Virus record (IMG/VR): IMGVR_UViG_3300034072_000758
Coordinates: 434,001-498,000 of that record
Direction: 5' to 3' (one strand)
Length of the DNA: 64,000 nucleotides
How positions within the stretch are numbered: position 1 is the stretch's first letter; each line of letters starts with the position of its first letter. The notes beneath the pieces are model-generated. The model had not been told where the DNA came from, ran no database searches, and worked only from the letters and a program-made list of their open reading frames with translations. Position numbers and translations under genes: made by a program. Below, piece after piece: positions 33,479-46,325 of the stretch.

Positions 33479-34705
33479 TTACAGCCACACTTTCCCATAT
33501 GCTGATTGAAGAATAGACGGGATGAACACTTTACCACCTTCGTCCTGATAGTTTTCCAGAACAGCCAACAAAGTTCTACCAACCGCCAGTCCAGACCCAT
33601 TTAAGGTGTGGACTGGTTCTTTTTTGCCTTGAGCATTGGTGAAGCGAGTCTTCATGCGATTGGCTTGGAAATCGCCACAATTGGATACCGAGCTAATCTC
33701 ACGATAAGTTTTCTGTGATGGCACCCAAACTTCGATGTCGTAAGTCTTTTGTGCTCCGAAGCCCATGTCACCCGCGCATAATAACATGATGCGATATTTT
33801 ATACCCAATGAAGTGAGGATGTTTTCAGCACAAGATAACATGAACTCGTGCTCTTGTGCCGACTTCTCAGGCGTAGTGATCGACACCATTTCAACTTTGT
33901 TAAATTGATGCTGGCGTAAGATGCCATGCGTGTCCTTACCAGCGCTTCCGGCTTCGGATCGGAAACATGGGGTCAGCGCAGTTAGACGAAGGGGTAATTC
34001 ACCCTCAGCCAAAATCTTATCAGCGACATAATTTGTCAAAGTCACTTCGGCGGTCGGGATCAGAAAATGTTCATCAGTGTTCACCGAGTACAGGTCATCG
34101 ATGAATTTAGGAAGCTGACCAGTTCCATACAAGGCCGTGTCTTTCACCAGCAACGGAGTGGAGCATTCCTCGAATCCATTTTTAACCTGACATTCAAGCA
34201 TATACTGCCCGATAACTCGTTCGAGACGTGCCACGGGGCCGCGCATGAATGAGAAGCGTGTGCCAGACATCGCTACCCCCGCTGATATATCGAGGCCGTA
34301 TTTGCTCCCGATCTCAACATGGTCTTTCGGGTCTTTTATGGAACGGAGCGGAATATCATTGACACGAACCAATTGATTGTCGTGCTCGTCTTTTCCAACC
34401 GGAACGTCATTGGCTGGGACATTTGGGATGTCGAACAAATAGTCTTCAAGTTCCCCGGCCAGATAATCGACCAAGCCTTCGGCAGTAGTTATTTCGGCCT
34501 TCACCGCCACCCCGGTTTCATGGTCTTTATTCCGCGCGGCATCCTTGCGCTTGGCGTACAAAGCCTCAAGATCAGTCAACGATTTACGATGATCTGTATC
34601 CTTTTTGAGAATGTCCGAAACTATCCGAGACCCGTCAAGCCCTCTCTTATTCAACCCGCTGGCAACGGCTTCTGGATTCTCGCGGATGGTCTTTATATTG
34701 ATCAT
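33479..34705 (-). CDS. serS: seryl-tRNA synthetase
   Basis: N-terminal coiled arm, LIPTAEV.LTN, FRSEAGSAGKDT.GILRQHQFNKVE, YREISS.SNC.DFQA.R, TLNGSGLAVGRT. Confidence 0.97.
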   Translation of the reverse strand: MINIKTIRENPEAVASGLNKRGLDGSRIVSDILKKDTDHRKSLTDLEALYAKRKDAARNKDHETGVAVKAEITTAEGLVDYLAGELEDYLFDIPNVPANDVPVGKDEHDNQLVRVNDIPLRSIKDPKDHVEIGSKYGLDISAGVAMSGTRFSFMRGPVARLERVIGQYMLECQVKNGFEECSTPLLVKDTALYGTGQLPKFIDDLYSVNTDEHFLIPTAEVTLTNYVADKILAEGELPLRLTALTPCFRSEAGSAGKDTHGILRQHQFNKVEMVSITTPEKSAQEHEFMLSCAENILTSLGIKYRIMLLCAGDMGFGAQKTYDIEVWVPSQKTYREISSVSNCGDFQANRMKTRFTNAQGKKEPVHTLNGSGLAVGRTLLAVLENYQDEGGKVFIPSILQSAYGKVWL

Positions 34706-39378: not shown

Positions 39379-40567
39379 AATAATTTGCTAATATGTTTCT
39401 ATAATATTTTAAATACAAGTTCGAGTTTCCCGAAACGTTATTCATAGTTACAATAATATCCAGATTGTCTATGTAAAACCTCACAAATTCGGTAGCATCA
39501 ATTGGTAATGTGACATCACTTAACATGCTTATGGAACGAAGTGCCGAGTCATAATAATAAATCTCGTGTGGCGCACTAGGAGAACTTGAATTTTTCATAT
39601 TTGTTATGATCAAATATTTGTTAGTTCGATTTGATATTTTATGTATATGGCTGTTCCCATTACTTATTATGCTTCTGGTATAATTGTTTATATTGCCCTG
39701 TAACGAACTCGTCTCATCGGTTACAACGGACGTAGAGGGGTTATAAGAAAAATAGGAAAATTGAGGATGCGTTACGCTGCTTGAACCATGATGTAGCAAC
39801 AATTCATTGTTGGCCGGGGATAACATCGCGCGAGACGCAAGGTTACCAGATACAAAGGTATATGGGCTTGTGTATGTTTGTTCATACGTGATGCCGGTAG
39901 ACGTATTGAACTTGAAGAAATATAAATAGCTTCCATTCATATTCCACATCACAAAAGTGTCGTCATTAATCCATTCTACTTCACACACCGCACCAAATGA
40001 GCTATAACCCGGAATACCGGTAGGCACAGTAATAGTAAAATTAGAAGCCGGGGTCAAAACCGTTACATATACCGTTCCACTAAGAACACTCGCCGTAGCC
40101 GCCCAATCATTTGTTTTATGCCAACCATTTGCGGTAGTCGTACTCGCAGCCGAGGTAGCATGGTAAATAGAGCGTGATGTCGATGTAGAGGCAAATGGAA
40201 ATGTTGTTAACACATCAGAACCACTTACAGTTGTCTGTGGATAACCACCAAAAACCGAGGGTTTATGAAGCGCTCTCGTAAAAGTAAAAGGACCACTACT
40301 ATAAAAACCTGATGAATTTGCGGTATCTTTCACATACAAATCGGTCCCGGTATTCAACATAATAGCATATCTTATACCAGACACATAATAGCCGCTCGAA
40401 GCAGTGGTTGTATCTTTTCCGTATGAATACAGGCCATTTACCATTGGTGCTGTACTTGGGTGTACTTTACCATTAAAGCTTACAAAATACGGGGTGTGAT
40501 CAAACCTCGTACTTGAGGTCTGAGCGGGCGATGTACTTTTTCCTTCAACCAAATAATGATACAGCAT
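39377..40567 (-). CDS. AT-rich Ser/Thr/Tyr-rich virion accessory protein (possible receptor-binding)
   Basis: TAATG-coupled to the collagen fibre; beta-rich composition. Confidence 0.6.
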   Translation of the reverse strand: MLYHYLVEGKSTSPAQTSSTRFDHTPYFVSFNGKVHPSTAPMVNGLYSYGKDTTTASSGYYVSGIRYAIMLNTGTDLYVKDTANSSGFYSSGPFTFTRALHKPSVFGGYPQTTVSGSDVLTTFPFASTSTSRSIYHATSAASTTTANGWHKTNDWAATASVLSGTVYVTVLTPASNFTITVPTGIPGYSSFGAVCEVEWINDDTFVMWNMNGSYLYFFKFNTSTGITYEQTYTSPYTFVSGNLASRAMLSPANNELLLHHGSSSVTHPQFSYFSYNPSTSVVTDETSSLQGNINNYTRSIISNGNSHIHKISNRTNKYLIITNMKNSSSPSAPHEIYYYDSALRSISMLSDVTLPIDATEFVRFYIDNLDIIVTMNNVSGNSNLYLKYYRNILANY

Positions 40568-41847
40568 TATGAGAAGTTCTTCCCGATCTGGGTTAGAAGA
40601 TACGTTAAACCGCCGTCATATGTAAATACAGTGTAAACATCTACCGCACCATTCGACGTGGATTGTGTATACGTAACATTCTGGGGGGTTCTGGCCGATG
40701 CTGGCCATGTTACCGAAAATGCTCCGCCCCCCTGCCGCACCGCAACAATCGCAGTATATGTTCTGGATGTCGAAACCGCATTCGTGAAGGCAAAACTTGT
40801 AGCCCCGGTTAAGGTAATATTATAAAAATAGTTAGCACCTAGATCGAGCGTAACAGTTCCAGACGCACTAGCAACCACCGCAACATTTTCATAAGTTGGC
40901 CCCATCGGACCTTGAATACCTTGAATGCCCTGAACACCTTGAATACCTTGAACACCTTGAATACCCTGAGCACCAGTATTACCTATAGGGCCTTGTATAC
41001 CTTGTATACCTTGCGGACCTTGTGGTCCTTGCTCACCTCTAACATACCCAGCGTTCCCAATCGATCCATTGGAATATAGAATATTAAGCCAGCCGGTAAT
41101 CGCGTTGGCCGAAACAATACCATTACCATATGGACCTGCTGGTCCGGTCGCGCCTTGGTTACCCTGTGGCCCCTGTGGGCCGATCACCGAACCAGCATCA
41201 ATCGTCGCTCCCGTTGAGAGAGTCAGAATAAGGCGTCCTGAGCCATTGACCACTGCTGCTGTAACACTGGTCCCACTTGGACCCACCACGGCACCGGCAT
41301 TGATCACGGTTCCAGACGTAAGCGTCAGATAAAGTTGACCGTTCGTAACTGTAGCAGACTGTACACCAACACCATTGGTCCCAGAAGCCCCATCTAAGCC
41401 CTTTACGTAGCCAGCATTGATCGTGAGGCCGTTGGACATATTAATGAAGAGATCGCCGCTCTGAGCTACGTATGCGCCTTGTACGCCTACACCGTTTTCA
41501 CCCACAACATCACCCACGTCGATGACCGTGTTATCAGTCAAAGTGAAAATCAGATTTTGGTTCAGAATTTGCGCGTTGGAAACGCCGACGCCTTGCGGAC
41601 CAGCCTCGCCAGTAGGAACGATCCCGGCATCAATGACTGAGTTATCGGTCATGAGCATCAGAAGATGATTCTCACCGTTTACGTACTCAACGTATACGTT
41701 GGCAACACCCACCCCACGCGGGCCTTCTGGCCCCATAACAACAGGGATTTTATCGACCACGGCATTAGGTATTATCGTGTCGTTTGTATTGTTGAACATA
41801 ACTGGTGGAGTACCACCGGGAAGACGGGCATTGATAATATCTGGCAT
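40567..41847 (-). CDS. collagen-like tail fibre protein
   Basis: (GXY)n tracts, several GVGVxxAxVxxGxL.LTLS.G..I.AG.V.G repeats, C-terminal TLDL.....NITLTG...F.FTN domain; late promoter. Confidence 0.85.
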
Positions 41848-41872
41848 ACAGATATTTATTCAACAACATGAC

Positions 41873-41900
41873 TTGACAAAATATCAGGCTATGCTATCTT
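41873..41900 (+). promoter_or_regulatory. sigma70-type promoter of a non-coding transcript
   Basis: TTGACA-16 nt-TATCTT with extended TG; no credible ORF before the terminator at 42340. Confidence 0.7.
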
Positions 41901-41906
41901 ATACTT

Positions 41907-42373
41907 GTCCCTCCGCTATTGGGTCGTGTGAACATTCTAGGTAAGTAACACGTTCTCATACAGGCTCGCGGTTAAGTCTATGGGTGATCTGAGTGGCCTA
42001 AGATGTATGTGGTTCGATTCCACTATGGGATACCAATTCGCTCAAATGAGCAAACGAATTGTTGTTTAAAGGGTGTATGGAGGCACGTTCTGTCCGAGTG
42101 GGGACAGAAAGGCGGGGGTTCGAATCCCCGTTGTCCGAATCAGGTGGTGTTTTCGAGGGAGACCTTGGAAATGTGGGTTCGAGTCCCACAGAGACAGAAC
42201 AACAGACCAACGGCGAGAGTTGCGTATCTATAAGTTCAGGCCCGAAAGGGATAGAGTGAAGCTGAGGATGCCGCGAAGGAAGTAAGCGCGGATTCGATGA
42301 CGCTGAAACGAATATTACACCCTGACGCTCTCAATGATTAGGCCCTCGGACATACCATCCGAGGGCCTTTTTT
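41907..42373 (+). ncRNA. unidentified structured ncRNA (~460 nt) with a tRNA-like 5' module and two further T-loop hairpins
   Basis: T-loops at 42013, 42119, 42178; CCA at 42033-35; helices 42070-77/42316-23 and 42087-94/42193-200; GNRA hairpins; terminator 42340..42373. Confidence 0.7.
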
Positions 42374-42704
42374 ATATGTATAGCAACACGTCCATTAAAA
42401 GATTATCTATACATTCCACCGAGGGCTTGTCCGTGTGCGGGAAATTAGTGTACATCAAACGATTATCATTGAACGTAAATTCATACTTATATTCTTGAAT
42501 ACCATTATTTCTAAGCTTATACGTGATGTCATCAATAAAAATCTCCCAAATAAAAACCGAATCAATTTTGTCTATTTCAATACGTTTATACTTATGTCCA
42601 TAGCCCTCACGACATTGCGTCCATTTACCCAAGCTCTCTATTTGCTTAAAAGCATTTTCAAGAGACCTGAGTAAATGTCGTTGTTCCTGCGGTGTGTAAA
42701 TCAT
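42372..42704 (-). CDS. hypothetical protein, shared C-terminal motif
   Basis: Start MIYTPQ gives an ATGA overlap with the K+ channel stop; ends ECIDNLLMDVLLYI. Confidence 0.6.
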   Translation of the reverse strand: MIYTPQEQRHLLRSLENAFKQIESLGKWTQCREGYGHKYKRIEIDKIDSVFIWEIFIDDITYKLRNNGIQEYKYEFTFNDNRLMYTNFPHTDKPSVECIDNLLMDVLLYI

Positions 42705-43045
42705 TTCTTTTGAGACCGAATGTATTTCAGAATTTCTTCTTGTTCTTCGTGCGTGAACTCGTTGCGATTCTCGACCATCGTACTGATGATGCGACCGATC
42801 AACAAAGGCATAATGAAAAGAAGAATGACGTGCATCAAGCCAGTCGCAATAAGCCGCCCAGCCAAAGTTGTGGGATACATGTCGCCGTAGCCGACCGTAG
42901 AGGCAGTCACGACGCACCACCAAAGACTATCCCAGAAAGTCTTTCCTTCGGCCCACGAGTAGCCCAGAGCCGCCAGAAACACGATCAATACATACAGAGC
43001 AATAAGCTCACGGATCGTGTTTGTCGCCTTGATCAAATACTTCAT
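42701..43045 (-). CDS. two-TM potassium channel (KcsA-like, 114 aa)
   Basis: TM1, pore helix SLWWCVVTAST, filter TVGYGD, TM2; AAGGAG RBS. Confidence 0.9.
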   Translation of the reverse strand: MKYLIKATNTIRELIALYVLIVFLAALGYSWAEGKTFWDSLWWCVVTASTVGYGDMYPTTLAGRLIATGLMHVILLFIMPLLIGRIISTMVENRNEFTHEEQEEILKYIRSQKK

Positions 43046-43104
43046 ACTATCTCCTTTTCTAATAGAGAAGCGCAGCATACTACTTTTTAATGGAAGCATC
43101 AAGA

Positions 43105-43386
43105 TCAGCCATGACGATATAATGCGTCAGACAACCAACCATCCCAATCATCGAATGGAGGAATGTTGTTGAGATCGACCACGAAGTAACGCATCAGGGC
43201 ATTATCGACTGTGGCTTGCGCTCTGGCCTTCCAAACAGCTTTCGCTTCCTCGGAAGATGGATAGATACCTACCAAGTCGATTTTAGAAACATCTTTGAAT
43301 TGGAGAGAATCGACGGAGACCAACTCTCCCCCAATCACCAAATACAACCACTGTCTTGTGTGAAAGCTGTCGGTTTCGTTGGTCAT
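43105..43386 (-). CDS. DUF4170-family protein (alphaproteobacterial)
   Basis: LVIGGEL......F.D...IDLVG.YP....A...WKA.AQATVDNA.MRYF. Confidence 0.8.
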   Translation of the reverse strand: MTNETDSFHTRQWLYLVIGGELVSVDSLQFKDVSKIDLVGIYPSSEEAKAVWKARAQATVDNALMRYFVVDLNNIPPFDDWDGWLSDALYRHG

Positions 43387-43413
43387 ATTCCAGTCCTTGT
43401 GATCAAAGTATTT

Positions 43414-43490
43414 TGGCAGGGGTGGAGAGATTCGAACTCCCATCGCGCAGTTTTGGAGACTGCCGCTCTAACCGTTGGAGCTACACCCCT
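43414..43490 (-). tRNA. trnW: tRNA-Trp(CCA)
   Basis: AGGGGTG/CACCCCT, GCAGT-CTCCAAA-ACTGC, G73-CCA. Confidence 0.95.
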
Positions 43491-43841: not shown

Positions 43842-43932
43842 TGGAGGACGTGGTGGGACTCGAACCCACGGTGGTCTATGTTACGACAACAGGTTAAGAG
43901 CCTGTCCCTCTCGCCGCTGAGGTGACACGTCC
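43842..43932 (-). tRNA. tRNA-Lys(CTT) with long variable arm (91 nt)
   Basis: GGACGTG/CACGTCC, ACAGG-CTCTTAA-CCTGT, ~19-nt variable region with a GTC/GAC stem, U73-CCA. Confidence 0.85.
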
Positions 43933-44395: not shown

Positions 44396-44446
44396 ATAGA
44401 AAACCTTTAATATAGATCGTTATCCACATCCATATTAAAGGTTATG

Positions 44447-44530
44447 AGGATGTAGAGGGACTCGAACCCCCGATGGTCTTTTGACAACGGATTAAAAGCC
44501 CGTCCCTCTCGCCGCTGAGGTGATACATCC
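44447..44530 (-). tRNA. tRNA-Lys(TTT) with long variable arm
   Basis: GGATGTA/TACATCC, ACGGG-CTTTTAA-TCCGT, GTC-AAAA-GAC variable hairpin, D-arm identical to the 43842 tRNA, U73, no CCA. Confidence 0.85.
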
Positions 44531-44992: not shown

Positions 44993-45102
44993 CAACAAGA
45001 CGGTGGGGTTCGAACCCACAACCTTTCGGCTCCGACTTTGACCGCAACGGCTTTTCGCAAACCATTACGTGCGTGTGTATACCCATTCCACCACGCCAAG
45101 TT
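44993..45102 (-). ncRNA. oversized tRNA-like RNA (110 nt) without a canonical anticodon loop
   Basis: T-arm GTGGG-TTCGAAC-CCCAC, type II D-arm GTG-GAATGGGTATA-CAC, imperfect acceptor AACTTGGCG/CGTCTTGTT, ~55 nt multi-hairpin centre. Confidence 0.65.
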
Positions 45103-45749: not shown

Positions 45750-46325
45750 TTACTTTACGATCTTGAAACCGTGCTTCTTGTAGTATGGAACGTTCTCGAA
45801 ATCGATGACCGACACCATAAACTTACCATAGCCGTTGCTGACCATGACTTGTTCGACCGTGGCCACGACCTGATCCACGACCGACTTGACCGCCTTCGCC
45901 GCTTTGATCTTCGGCTTGATGGTTTCGACAGCGGGTTCAACCGACGCTTCATCTTCAATAACGCGCGGCGCGATTTCGGCTGCGACCGTTTCGATGCGAG
46001 TGTCGATGACATTGATGGAATCGCCGAACTTGGAGACTTCACGATCCAGACGCTTGAGTTCGAGGTTTTCGACCGCGTTGTTATGACCGTTACCATCCTT
46101 ATGAACGACTTCATCATTCTTCGTCGCGCCGAGGAAGCAGATGGCTATCAGACGATGGAGGCCGACCTTGGAATGGAGGGCGACGTTCTTGAGACTGATA
46201 CGGAGCTTATCGCCATCCTTCTGATAGGATAGTTCGGTGCCGTCCTTCTTGAAGACGCGACCATCGGAAGTGGCAAGATATTGTTCGTCCGCGAAATAGA
46301 AACGGACGCGCTTGACGCTCGACAT
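45750..46325 (-). CDS. HNH-fold protein with Lys/Ala-rich C-terminal extension
   Basis: ATSDGRVF, LHRLIAICF, VVHKDGNGHNNAVENLE; codon-adapted rather than AT-rich. Confidence 0.7.
   Translation of the reverse strand: MSSVKRVRFYFADEQYLATSDGRVFKKDGTELSYQKDGDKLRISLKNVALHSKVGLHRLIAICFLGATKNDEVVHKDGNGHNNAVENLELKRLDREVSKFGDSINVIDTRIETVAAEIAPRVIEDEASVEPAVETIKPKIKAAKAVKSVVDQVVATVEQVMVSNGYGKFMVSVIDFENVPYYKKHGFKIVK

What the first reader, a model, noticed from the sequence alone, without database searches (positions are those of the whole stretch)
41907..42373. Stand-alone ~460-nt structured ncRNA with three T-loops and nested long-range helices
Seen: it has its own promoter (41873) and terminator (42340) and no credible ORF. 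Module 1 (~41953-42035) is tRNA-like with an imperfect acceptor (TTCTCAT/ATGGGAT), a 5-bp D-stem, a 10-nt pseudo-anticodon loop, a T-arm and encoded CCA; 5' GTCCC at the predicted start site is an alternative acceptor partner. Module 2 is closed by AGGGTGTA(42070)/TACACCCT(42316). Inside it, GTTCTGTC(42087)/GACAGAAC(42193) encloses two T-loop hairpins (42119, 42178), and GGACAGAA(42102) is an alternative partner, suggesting a switch. TCAGG-CCC-GAAA-GGG-A at 42236 resembles SRP helix 8 but lacks the AGCA strand. Established: paired T-loops bind tRNA elbows in RNase P, T-boxes and the L1 stalk, and large phage ncRNAs (GOLLD, ROOL) lie near tRNA genes. Inference: an undescribed tRNA-binding or tRNA-mimic RNA.
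Basis: partly seen in the sequence, partly recalled or inferred. Interest (0 to 1): 0.78.

Follow-up and report, generated by a model that had tools for sequence, protein, structure and literature searches.

The report
Mosaic tRNA-like RNA gene, huge phage
A 517-kb phage carries a small stand-alone gene, with its own promoter and terminator and no protein-coding frame, whose ~465-nt RNA is stitched together from rearranged pieces of the phage's own tRNA genes; it is a tRNA look-alike by descent, not the tRNA-binding machine first proposed, and whether it still does anything could not be tested.

Summary
The promoter and terminator are real by statistics: the promoter belongs to a phage class with 32 sites against ~1 by chance, and strong terminators number 18 against 0. 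No ORF is credible. No Rfam family reaches threshold, and ARAGORN finds nothing.

The "modules" are fragments of this phage's own tRNA genes. 42095-42137 is the 3' half of tRNA-Ser(GGA). The "pseudo-anticodon arm" (41983-42006) is a class-II D-arm. T-arm 2b is identical to neighbouring tRNA-Lys T-arms. Module 1 has an 8/4 acceptor/T geometry with A73-CCA.

The nested 8-bp helices are near chance (4 against 1.2, p~0.07); one has zero pairing probability. The SRP-like hairpin matches a class-II variable arm.

The phage already has a permuted tmRNA elsewhere, encodes SerRS 7 kb away, and lacks Ro60, integrase and RtcB.

No homolog was found in phage, viral, metagenome, genome or read collections, so covariation and transcription are untestable.

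Best reading: an irregular, non-decoding tRNA-like polycistron of the kind Mukai et al. (2017) described. It may act as a tRNA(-Ser) mimic or may be a decaying tRNA mini-operon.

The parts
41873..41900 (+). Sigma-70-type promoter: -35 TTGACA, 16-nt spacer, extended -10 TGcTATCTT. Predicted start is near G41907.
   Evidence: 10/12 match plus TG; member of a 32-site phage promoter class, TTGACA-N14-rTGnTAnnnT, against ~1 expected. Inferred start; no RNA data.
41907..41951 (+). 5' leader with no tRNA similarity. GUCCC at the start can pair either with GGGAU (42027-31) or with AGGGAU (42247-52).
   Evidence: no similarity above null. (alternative pairings; long-range duplex dG -42.6 against -28.2+-4.1, but chosen post hoc).
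41952..42035 (+). Unit 1: irregular tRNA-like cloverleaf. It has an 8-bp acceptor UUCUCAUA (41953-60) / UAUGGGAU (42024-31) with 7 of 8 pairs, a 4-bp T-stem GUGG/CCAC around UUCGAUU (42009-23), A73 and an encoded CCA (42032-35).
   Evidence: 8/4 geometry, unique in this genome. (tRNA-Sec model full-length, 16.9 bits, E~0.3, below the gathering score of 47). ARAGORN and RF00005 find no call.
41983..42006 (+). Segment homologous to positions 6-28 (acceptor end plus D-arm) of the phage's tRNA-Ser(UGA). It can instead form the D-arm AUCU / GAGUGGCCUA / AGAU.
   Evidence: local score 31 against a null maximum of 19.3+-1.9 (highest 25).
42036..42086 (+).
   Evidence: AGGGUGUA/UACACCCU pair probability 0.00.
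42087..42200 (+). Unit 2: 114-nt tRNA-shaped four-way junction closed by GUUCUGUC/GACAGAAC. A 3-nt spacer (AGA) between the T-stem and the 3' strand breaks any 12-bp acceptor branch. There is no D-stem.
   Evidence: closing helix probability 0.86. (fits no 7/5, 8/4 or 9/3 geometry). (tRNA-Sec model 12 bits, E 6). Model R1 finds only itself.
42095..42137 (+). Unit 2a: copy of the 3' half of tRNA-Ser(GGA), comprising the variable-arm remnant, T-arm, acceptor 3' strand UUGUCC and G73. It has a 5-nt and a 1-nt deletion. With GGACAG (42102-07) it can form an acceptor/T-arm minihelix.
   Evidence: score 43 against a null maximum of 19.2+-2.1. The 3' flank TTGTCCG is identical 7/7 and the 5' flank 14/18.
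42149..42172 (+). 10-bp hairpin with a GAGA loop that abuts T-arm 2b, at the position of a class-II variable arm.
   Evidence: pair probability 0.97.
42173..42189 (+). T-arm 2b, GUGGG-UUCGAGU-CCCAC, a canonical 5-bp T-arm.
   Evidence: identical 17-18/18 to the T-arms of the tRNA-Lys genes in the adjacent array.
42201..42335 (+). Tail with no significant tRNA similarity. It holds a CCC-GAAA-GGG hairpin (42241-50), like the CCGAAAGG variable arms of the phage's tRNA-Ser and tRNA-Tyr. It also holds a decayed T-arm-like stretch, GCGCGGAUUCGAUGACGC (42286-42303). It may be a third, more decayed unit.
   Evidence: The resemblances are short and not significant on their own.
42340..42373 (+). Intrinsic terminator specific to the + strand: perfect 11-bp stem, 7-nt loop, then a T-run.
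   Evidence: (one of 18 strong terminators genome-wide against 0 in shuffles). (probability 0.99).

Best explanation
This is a stand-alone promoter-to-terminator unit whose ~465-nt transcript is a patchwork of pieces of the phage's own tRNA genes. In effect it is an irregular, non-decoding tRNA-like polycistron.

Shown:
- The transcription signals are of the phage's standard class and bracket an ORF-less stretch on the strand opposite to all neighbouring genes.
- Unit 1 is a cloverleaf-like element with an 8-bp acceptor, a 4-bp T-stem, A73 and an encoded CCA.
- Unit 2 is built round a copy of the 3' half of tRNA-Ser(GGA) plus a second T-arm identical to the neighbouring tRNA-Lys T-arms.
- Neither unit meets tRNA criteria.

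Inferred:
- Host RNA polymerase transcribes the unit.
- tRNA-processing enzymes (RNase P and 3' trimming at the CCA) release one or two tRNA-shaped pieces.
- These pieces do not decode. They present tRNA elbows and acceptor ends to tRNA-binding proteins, acting as a tRNA(-Ser)-like mimic or decoy. The 2a minihelix keeps G1:C72, G2:C71, A3:U70 and G73 of tRNA-Ser.
- The most plausible partners are the phage's own SerRS, the CCA-adding or processing enzymes, or a host toxin aimed at tRNA.
For: Promoter and terminator statistics, plus this being the only ORF-less promoter-to-terminator unit of its promoter class. No Pfam hit for any ORF. The genome is ~92% coding with a median gap of 55 nt, so a 525-nt non-coding stretch is among the 4-5 largest.

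Descent from tRNA genes rests on local scores of 43 and 31 against null maxima of ~19+-2, and an 18/18 T-arm identity. Module 1 has 8/4 geometry with A73-CCA. The tRNA-Sec model aligns full-length to both units, at 16.9 and 12 bits. The MFE z-score is -2.9 on the + strand.

The phage encodes SerRS at window 33479-34705. The adjacent array holds class-II-shaped tRNAs with Lys anticodons.

Precedent: expressed polycistrons of irregular tRNA-like sequences, some charged but not used in translation (PMC5389517). tRNA-Ser-preferring NTase toxins (PMC11541572). Phage tRNAs as counter-defence (PMC10264068, PMC11555353).
Against: No transcript evidence: no RNA run could be listed. No homolog anywhere, so there is no conservation or covariation.

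Two of three T-stems are damaged relative to their parent tRNAs, and the D and anticodon stems are broken. The long-range helices are near chance, and thermodynamic folds are unstable and disagree with the cloverleaf readings.

The genome holds other orphan T-arm debris, which fits neutral decay. No partner protein has been shown; the co-fold job was not scored.
Confidence: 0.45

Rival explanations
1. Inert relic. A small tRNA operon (promoter, two or three tRNA genes, terminator) arose by duplication and rearrangement of tRNA-Ser and tRNA-Lys genes and is now decaying. It may still be transcribed, but the RNA has no function.
For: Indels and broken stems relative to the parent tRNAs. A gradient from a recognisable unit 1 to a barely recognisable tail. 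Other orphan T-arm elements lie in and near the arrays. No homolog or conservation. Helices near chance.
Against: The promoter has a perfect -35 and an extended -10, and the terminator has a perfect 11-bp stem, while the tRNA bodies are heavily altered. The genome is dense yet keeps 525 non-coding nt. The unit lies alone on the opposite strand from its neighbours. Several perfect local helices are retained.
Confidence: 0.35
2. Unusual but working tRNAs. Unit 1 (8/4, A73, CCA) and/or unit 2 would be charged and used by the ribosome, for example for recoding, like allo-tRNAs.
For: 8/4 geometry and CCA. Full-length tRNA-Sec-model alignments. Unit 2's internal loop UUCGAAU lies 22 nt after the acceptor strand, where a Ser-CGA anticodon loop would sit. 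The phage has SerRS, a CUA suppressor tRNA and class-II tRNAs with Lys anticodons.
Against: Unit 1 has a 10-nt 'anticodon' loop, no variable arm and a broken D-stem. Unit 2 has no D-stem, a 4-bp/7-nt or 5-bp/8-nt loop ambiguity, a 3-nt spacer in the acceptor branch and no CCA. Scores are far below gathering. The internal hairpin is by homology a T-arm, not an anticodon arm.
Confidence: 0.06
3. Cis-antisense regulator. The + strand transcript exists to pair with, or collide with, the minus-strand transcript that runs from the 110-aa ORFan gene (42372-42704) into the collagen-repeat gene (40567-41847). The tRNA-like content would be incidental.
For: All neighbouring genes are on the minus strand, and no promoter of the main class for the downstream minus-strand gene was found in the gap. 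The + strand terminator stops just before the upstream gene's stop codon.
Against: This does not explain why the insert is made of tRNA pieces with a CCA end. No evidence exists for read-through on the minus strand. No RNA data.
Confidence: 0.06
4. One reading: a tRNA-binding scaffold in which paired T-loops dock tRNA elbows, as in RNase P, T-box stem I and the L1 stalk.
For: Three T-loop sequences lie in one RNA. There are no other data.
Against: The T-loops are hairpin T-arms copied from tRNA genes, not interdigitated pentanucleotide T-loop modules. There is no T-box, RNase P or other family signal. The proposed enclosing helices are not supported.
Confidence: 0.03
5. Member of a known family: tmRNA, YrlA, GOLLD, ROOL, RNase P RNA, SRP RNA, or an attP core.
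For: Weak T-arm-only matches to tmRNA models.
Against: No family comes near its gathering score. The phage's real tmRNA is elsewhere. The phage has no Ro60, tyrosine integrase or RtcB. No cellular tRNA shares module 1's 3' end.
Confidence: 0.01

Closest known systems
Polycistrons of irregular / allo-tRNA-like sequences (Mukai et al. 2017, PMC5389517)
   Same: Several non-canonical tRNA-shaped units lie in one transcription unit. Acceptor stems are 8 bp with a 4-bp T-stem (unit 1). Extra loops and multi-stem junctions occur. There is a link to serine identity (pieces of tRNA-Ser, with SerRS nearby). The described elements occur in bacteria and phages and are suspected to be non-translational.
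   Different: Described allo-tRNAs have a long variable arm, a long D-stem with a tetraloop, a 7-nt anticodon loop and good tRNA-Sec-model scores. Here none of these is met (16.9 and 12 bits). The units are demonstrably chimeras of fragments from different tRNA genes. No toxin-antitoxin genes were identified among the eight flanking ORFs scanned against Pfam.
tRNA pseudogenes and tRNA-gene debris in phage tRNA arrays
   Same: Sequence descent from tRNA genes, with indels and broken stems. Similar orphan T-arms lie elsewhere in this genome.
   Different: This locus is not in an array. It has its own strong promoter and terminator on the opposite strand from its neighbours and combines pieces of at least three different tRNAs.
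tmRNA tRNA-like domain, including the phage's own permuted tmRNA
   Same: Part of unit 1 (D-arm joined directly to a T-arm, acceptor strand and ACCA, with no anticodon arm) has the topology of a tmRNA tRNA-like domain.
   Different: There is no tag reading frame, no G3:U70, no pseudoknots and no model hit. The genome has a genuine permuted tmRNA at C1:332963-333252 (97.5 bits).
YrlA / bacterial Y RNAs (PMC4201824)
   Same: A non-coding RNA with a tRNA-like domain, sometimes phage-encoded.
   Different: No RF02553 match, no Ro-binding stem identified, and no Ro60 (TROVE) gene in the phage.
GOLLD and ROOL large phage ncRNAs
   Same: A large ORF-less RNA gene in a phage, close to tRNA genes.
   Different: No Rfam match even at E<=10. 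It is smaller and composed of tRNA fragments instead of a conserved complex fold.
T4 stable RNAs 'species 1 and 2' of the tRNA cluster (from memory, not tested here)
   Same: Phage-encoded small stable RNAs of unknown function associated with tRNA genes and tRNA-type processing.
   Different: The T4 RNAs are co-transcribed with tRNAs, whereas this unit stands alone.

Membership tests
tRNA (RF00005 / ARAGORN) | Covariance-model score at or above the gathering score (29 bits), or an ARAGORN call | tested here: not met
   No hit in 41907-42373 at gathering. No ARAGORN gene. Only T-arm fragments appear at E<=10.
tRNA (RF00005 / ARAGORN) | 7-nt anticodon loop on a 5-bp stem, with a D-stem | tested here: not met
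   Unit 1 has a 10-nt loop and mismatched D and anticodon stems. Unit 2 has no D-stem.
tRNA (RF00005 / ARAGORN) | T-arm with a UUCRAnU loop followed by an acceptor strand, discriminator and CCA | tested here: met
   Unit 1: GUGG-UUCGAUU-CCAC, then UAUGGGAU, A, CCA. Unit 2 has T-arms but no CCA.
allo-tRNA (8/4 or 9/3; PMC5389517) | 12-bp acceptor branch split 8/4 or 9/3 | tested here: met
   Unit 1 has 7 of 8 acceptor pairs plus a 4-bp T-stem. Unit 2 fails because of the AGA spacer.
allo-tRNA (8/4 or 9/3; PMC5389517) | Long variable arm, long D-stem with a tetraloop, long anticodon stem with a 7-nt loop | tested here: not met
   Unit 1 has an 8-nt unpaired variable region, a 5-bp D-like stem with an 8-nt loop, and a 10-nt anticodon-position loop.
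allo-tRNA (8/4 or 9/3; PMC5389517) | [quoted passage not shown] | tested here: inconclusive
   Alignments are full-length, but score only 16.9 bits (E~0.3) and 12 bits (E 6). The gathering score is 47, and true tRNAs of this genome score 16.6-45.9.
Irregular tRNA polycistron (PMC5389517) | Two or more irregular tRNA-like units on one transcript, seen in RNA data | not testable with these tools
   One promoter and one terminator bracket the units, but no RNA run could be listed.
tmRNA (RF00023, RF04321, RF01849-51) | Model score at or above gathering, a tag reading frame, and a G3:U70 acceptor | tested here: not met
   Only 8-12-bit T-arm matches. The acceptor has C3:G70. The real permuted tmRNA lies at C1:332963-333252.
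YrlA / Y RNA | RF02553 match and a Ro60 (TROVE) partner gene | tested here: not met
   No RF02553 hit in the region at E<=10. No TROVE domain in the genome.
GOLLD, ROOL, RNase P RNA, SRP RNA | Rfam model match | tested here: not met
   None is listed even at E<=10 over 41800-42450, and none at gathering over the window.
Interdigitated double T-loop module (T-box stem I, RNase P, L1 stalk) | Two pentanucleotide T-loops that interlock to form a flat docking surface for a tRNA elbow | not testable with these tools
   This needs 3D structure. By homology the T-loops here are ordinary T-arm hairpins of tRNA-Ser and tRNA-Lys, which argues against it.
attP core (tRNA 3' half for integration) | An integrase gene, and identity to a cellular tRNA 3' end | tested here: not met
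   No Phage_integrase domain in the genome. No cellular genome carries module 1's 3' end or the module-2 signature. Serine recombinases were not searched.

The most novel reading that the evidence does not exclude
The RNA is a purpose-built tRNA-Ser decoy. Early in infection the phage would make a non-decoding RNA that displays tRNA-Ser acceptor/T-arm and elbow features. This RNA would soak up a host defence enzyme that disables tRNA-Ser (for example a MenT/AbiEii-type nucleotidyltransferase or a tRNA nuclease), or would tune the phage's own SerRS. It would work alongside the phage's five ARAGORN-called tRNA-Ser genes, its SerRS and its class-II tRNAs with Lys anticodons. An RNA decoy assembled from tRNA fragments would be a new kind of phage counter-defence.
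Probability: 0.12. Interest if true: 0.75.

Novelty: new variant of a known kind. Interest (0 to 1): 0.4.

Why it matters
Huge phages carry large tRNA sets whose purpose is debated; proposals include codon supply, recoding and evasion of tRNA-targeting defences. This locus shows tRNA genes being cut up, recombined and placed under a dedicated promoter and terminator.

If the product is functional, it would be a phage-made tRNA mimic assembled from spare parts. It would tie together the phage's own SerRS, its irregular class-II tRNAs and host defences aimed at tRNA-Ser.

If it is a relic, it documents rapid birth and death of tRNA genes in a 517-kb phage. It also warns that T-loop-rich intergenic RNAs in such genomes need a descent test before a new fold is proposed.

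Tried and rejected
Known RNA families and gene finders:
- Rfam at gathering and at E<=10, on the whole region and on each module: nothing.
- ARAGORN: nothing.
- The tmRNA idea is rejected. The real permuted tmRNA is at C1:332963-333252, and RF00023 gives only T-arm hits.

Homolog searches, all negative:
- blastn (distant mode) against 50,697 phage records.
- Flanking-protein anchors: one gave nothing, the other only collagen-repeat noise.
- The adjacent ORF is an ORFan in 5.8 billion proteins.
- Terminase relatives (45-50% identity; 329-kb, 156-kb and smaller records), searched by DNA and with covariance model R1. The single 16-nt hit was a chance match in coding DNA.
- Double T-arm patterns in viral contigs gave adjacent tRNAs and class-II tRNA-Ser(CGA)-type genes.
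- The metagenome scan gave one unrelated locus.
- Two scans of 185,579 genomes gave nothing.

The best model hit, L177 7001-7104, is an uncalled 8/5 tRNA-Ser(CGA)-like element. Its similar closing helix is not shown to be homologous, and the GUUCU lead is not enriched.

Public reads: DNA runs hold only identical copies, and no RNA run could be listed.

Other checks:
- Internal paralogs: none.
- Units 1 and 2 are not significant tandem duplicates.
- Ro60, tyrosine integrase and RtcB are absent.
- The SerRS dimer + unit 2 co-fold was accepted but not folded or scored. It gives no evidence either way.
- The long-range 5'/3' duplex is not used as evidence because it was picked from the MFE after the fact.

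Full report
**Context.** The window is bases 434001-498000 of a complete 516,805-bp virus record with direct terminal repeats. Its GC content is 45%, and ARAGORN tRNAs, including a CUA suppressor. The finding lies in a 525-nt gap between two minus-strand genes. One is a collagen-repeat protein (40567-41847). The other is an ORFan whose real gene call is 110 aa (42372-42704). A minus-strand array of 14 tRNA genes starts 1 kb downstream.

**Checking the observation.** The + strand carries TTGACA, a 16-nt spacer and TGcTATCTT at 41873-41900. It also carries a terminator at 42340-42368 with a perfect 11-bp stem and a T-run.

These signals are not chance.
- Genome-wide, TTGACA-N16-18-TGnTAnnnT occurs 32 times, against 0-4 in shuffles.
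- Nearly all of these sites are intergenic and lie 20-33 nt upstream of an ORF start.
- Strong terminators number 18, against 0 in shuffles.
- Within this promoter class, this is the only unit followed by ~430 nt without a Shine-Dalgarno-led ORF and then a strong terminator.
- None of the small ORFs in the gap has a Pfam match.
- The genome is about 92% coding with a median gap of 55 nt, so this is one of its four or five largest non-coding stretches.

The transcription unit is therefore well supported by signals. There is no RNA evidence: no RNA run could be listed, and the DNA runs hold only identical copies.

**The proposed architecture does not hold up as well.**
- Perfect 8-bp inverted repeats number four, against 1.24+-1.47 in dinucleotide shuffles (p~0.07). 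Two of the four share one arm.
- MFE partners change with the stretch folded.
- In the ensemble for the whole RNA, AGGGUGUA/UACACCCU and the module-1 acceptor have pair probability 0.00. GUUCUGUC/GACAGAAC has 0.86, and the 42149-72 hairpin has 0.97.
- The energy model instead prefers a long interrupted duplex between 41907-41980 and 42200-42260 (dG -42.6 against -28.2+-4.1). I selected that pair from the MFE after the fact, so I do not count it as evidence.
- The overall MFE z-score is -2.9 on the + strand and -2.15 on the - strand.

**Known families.** No Rfam family reaches gathering over the region. At E<=10 only bare T-arm matches to tmRNA models and terminator look-alikes appear. ARAGORN calls nothing.

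The obvious rival, a permuted tmRNA that the tools had missed, is excluded. While following up orphan T-loops in the genome, I found the phage's real permuted tmRNA at C1:332963-333252. It scores 97.5 bits on RF04321 and 72.3 bits on alpha_tmRNA, and its tag ends in ALAA-stop.

**What the modules are.** I aligned each module to all 57 phage tRNAs, with shuffled controls. The modules turn out to be pieces of tRNA genes.
- 42095-42137 aligns to positions 40-89 of the phage's tRNA-Ser(GGA). That covers the end of the anticodon stem, the variable arm, the T-arm, the acceptor 3' strand and G73. The score is 43 against a null maximum of 19.2+-2.1. The 3' flank TTGTCCG is identical. There is a 5-nt deletion in the variable arm, and one C is lost from the T-stem.
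The score is 31 against 19.3+-1.9.
- T-arm 2b is identical over 17-18 nt to the T-arms of the tRNA-Lys genes in the adjacent array.
- The leader and the tail show no significant tRNA similarity. The tail does hold a CCC-GAAA-GGG hairpin like the CCGAAAGG variable arms of the phage's tRNA-Ser and tRNA-Tyr. It also holds a decayed T-arm-like stretch at 42286-42303.
- A sub-unit, 'TC(T/C)GAGTGG, ~15 nt, T-arm', occurs twice 105-106 nt apart. This amounts to two D-loop-plus-T-arm 'elbow' modules.
- Units 1 and 2 as wholes are not significant duplicates of each other.

**Geometry.** Unit 1 has four contiguous T-stem pairs, and an 8-nt acceptor strand that pairs 7 of 8 with 41953-60. A73 and CCA follow. 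This is an 8/4 acceptor branch. All called tRNA-Ser and tRNA-His genes of the phage are 7/5.

The tRNA-Sec model, the tool that first revealed 8/4 tRNAs, aligns full-length to unit 1 (16.9 bits, E~0.3) and to unit 2 (12 bits, E 6). These scores sit at the bottom edge of the genome's true tRNAs (16.6-45.9 bits) and far below gathering at 47 bits. Unit 2 fits no 12-bp branch because three nucleotides separate its T-stem from the closing strand.

**Search for relatives.** None of the following gave a homolog:
- blastn against phage records;
- flank-protein anchors;
- terminase relatives at 45-50% identity, searched by DNA and with covariance model R1 built on unit 2;
- T-arm spacing patterns in viral contigs;
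- T-arm spacing patterns in metagenome contigs;
- T-arm spacing patterns in 185,579 cellular genomes.

Many 'double T-loop' hits are class-II tRNA-Ser(CGA)-type genes whose anticodon loop reads UUCGAAU. The best model hit, L177 7001-7104 (29 bits), is such an uncalled 8/5 element in a tRNA array. Its closing helix resembles that of unit 2, but a census shows no enrichment of such elements. A covariation test is therefore not possible.

**Functional context.**
- The phage has no Ro60/TROVE, tyrosine integrase or RtcB. This removes the YrlA-with-Ro reading and the attP reading.
- It does encode a complete seryl-tRNA synthetase 7 kb away, at window 33479-34705 on the minus strand.
- The adjacent array contains two class-II-shaped tRNAs with Lys anticodons and U73.
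- A co-fold of the SerRS dimer with unit 2 was submitted, but the tool does not score protein-RNA jobs. It gives no evidence either way.

**Comparison with what is known.** Mukai et al. (PMC5389517) described 8/4 and 9/3 'allo-tRNAs', and 8/4 tRNA-Ser and tRNA-His in phage tRNA clusters. They also described polycistrons of irregular tRNA-like sequences with extra loops and five-stem junctions. Those polycistrons are expressed, are sometimes chargeable, are apparently not used in translation, and are suspected to be regulatory RNAs.

This locus works like that kind, but it fails the defining allo-tRNA features. It lacks a long variable arm, a tRNA-Sec-like D-arm, a 7-nt anticodon loop and a good model score. 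It also differs in being a demonstrable chimera of fragments from several tRNA genes. I therefore file it as a new variant of a known kind, not as a member.

**Verdict.** The thing is real, and no described family matches it. It is a tRNA look-alike by descent, not a tRNA-docking scaffold.

| Reading | Probability |
|---|---|
| Expressed, non-decoding tRNA(-Ser)-like mimic | ~0.45 |
| Inert relic of a rearranged tRNA mini-operon | ~0.35 |
| Working irregular tRNAs | ~0.06 |
| Cis-antisense regulator | ~0.06 |
| A known family | ~0.01 |

The specific decoy idea is plausible but untested. It proposes that the RNA acts against tRNA-Ser-directed toxins such as MenT3/AbiEii-type enzymes (PMC11541572, PMC7450476), in line with phage tRNAs serving as counter-defence (PMC10264068, PMC11555353).

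Noticed in passing
G000:C1:332963-333252 (+), outside the window (L244 264-553): A genuine permuted (two-piece, alpha-proteobacterial type) tmRNA that ARAGORN missed. It scores 97.5 bits on RF04321, and its tag ends ...MALAA-stop. Its intervening segment holds an extra T-arm hairpin, GCAGGTTCGAATCCTGC. A TTGACA promoter lies upstream. It hints at an alpha-proteobacterial host.
   Followed up: partly
window 43842-43932 (-) and 44446-44530 (-): Two class-II-shaped tRNAs (91 and 85 nt, long variable arm, U73) carry Lys anticodons CUU and UUU. They sit beside canonical-length tRNA-Lys genes with the same acceptor stem. They may be SerRS-type 'allo-tRNA-like' missense tRNAs.
   Followed up: partly
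window 33479-34705 (-): Phage-encoded seryl-tRNA synthetase (Seryl_tRNA_N plus class II core), ~7 kb from the finding. A class promoter at window ~34997 (-) lies ~258 nt upstream of its start, with a possible 57-aa ORF in between.
   Followed up: partly
G000:C1:117291-117364 (+): A tRNA with anticodon CUA (amber suppressor; ARAGORN labels it 'Pyl') in a 517-kb phage. This suggests possible TAG recoding of some genes.
   Followed up: no
G000:C1:431880-431995 (+) (L245 280-395): Two orphan T-arms 61 nt apart lie between an ORF end and tRNA-Ala. The first reads as a 4-bp T-stem, then CUCGAUCC, A and CCA (8/4-like). The locus is not a paralog of the finding beyond the T-loop.
   Followed up: partly
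window ~45003-45019 (-) and ~45226 (-); G000:C1:425084-425154 (+): Further orphan T-arms lie in gaps of the tRNA arrays. One weak tRNA (29.5 bits) was missed by ARAGORN. These are irregular or decaying tRNA genes.
   Followed up: no
genome-wide; e.g. window 41873, 2291, 10968, 26238, 33083, 37379: A sharply defined phage promoter class, TTGACA-N14-(A/G)TGnTAnnnT, has 32 sites. Almost all are intergenic and lie 20-33 nt upstream of a start codon. The site at C1:35345 (-) has no ORF for ~290 nt and may drive another non-coding RNA.
   Followed up: partly
L177 7001-7104 (+) (IMGVR_UViG_3300025646_000055): A 104-nt tRNA-like element, uncalled by ARAGORN, lies between tRNA-Arg and tRNA-Phe. It has an 8-bp acceptor, a 5-bp T-stem, anticodon-position loop UUCGAAU (Ser-CGA) and an over-long variable region. 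Many closely spaced 'double T-loops' in viral contigs are of this class-II tRNA-Ser(CGA) type.
   Followed up: partly
window 42701-43102 (-), 43105-43443 (-), 45750-46325 (-): Small potassium-channel-like protein (Ion_trans_2), a DUF4170 protein and an HNH endonuclease flank the tRNA array next to the finding.
   Followed up: no
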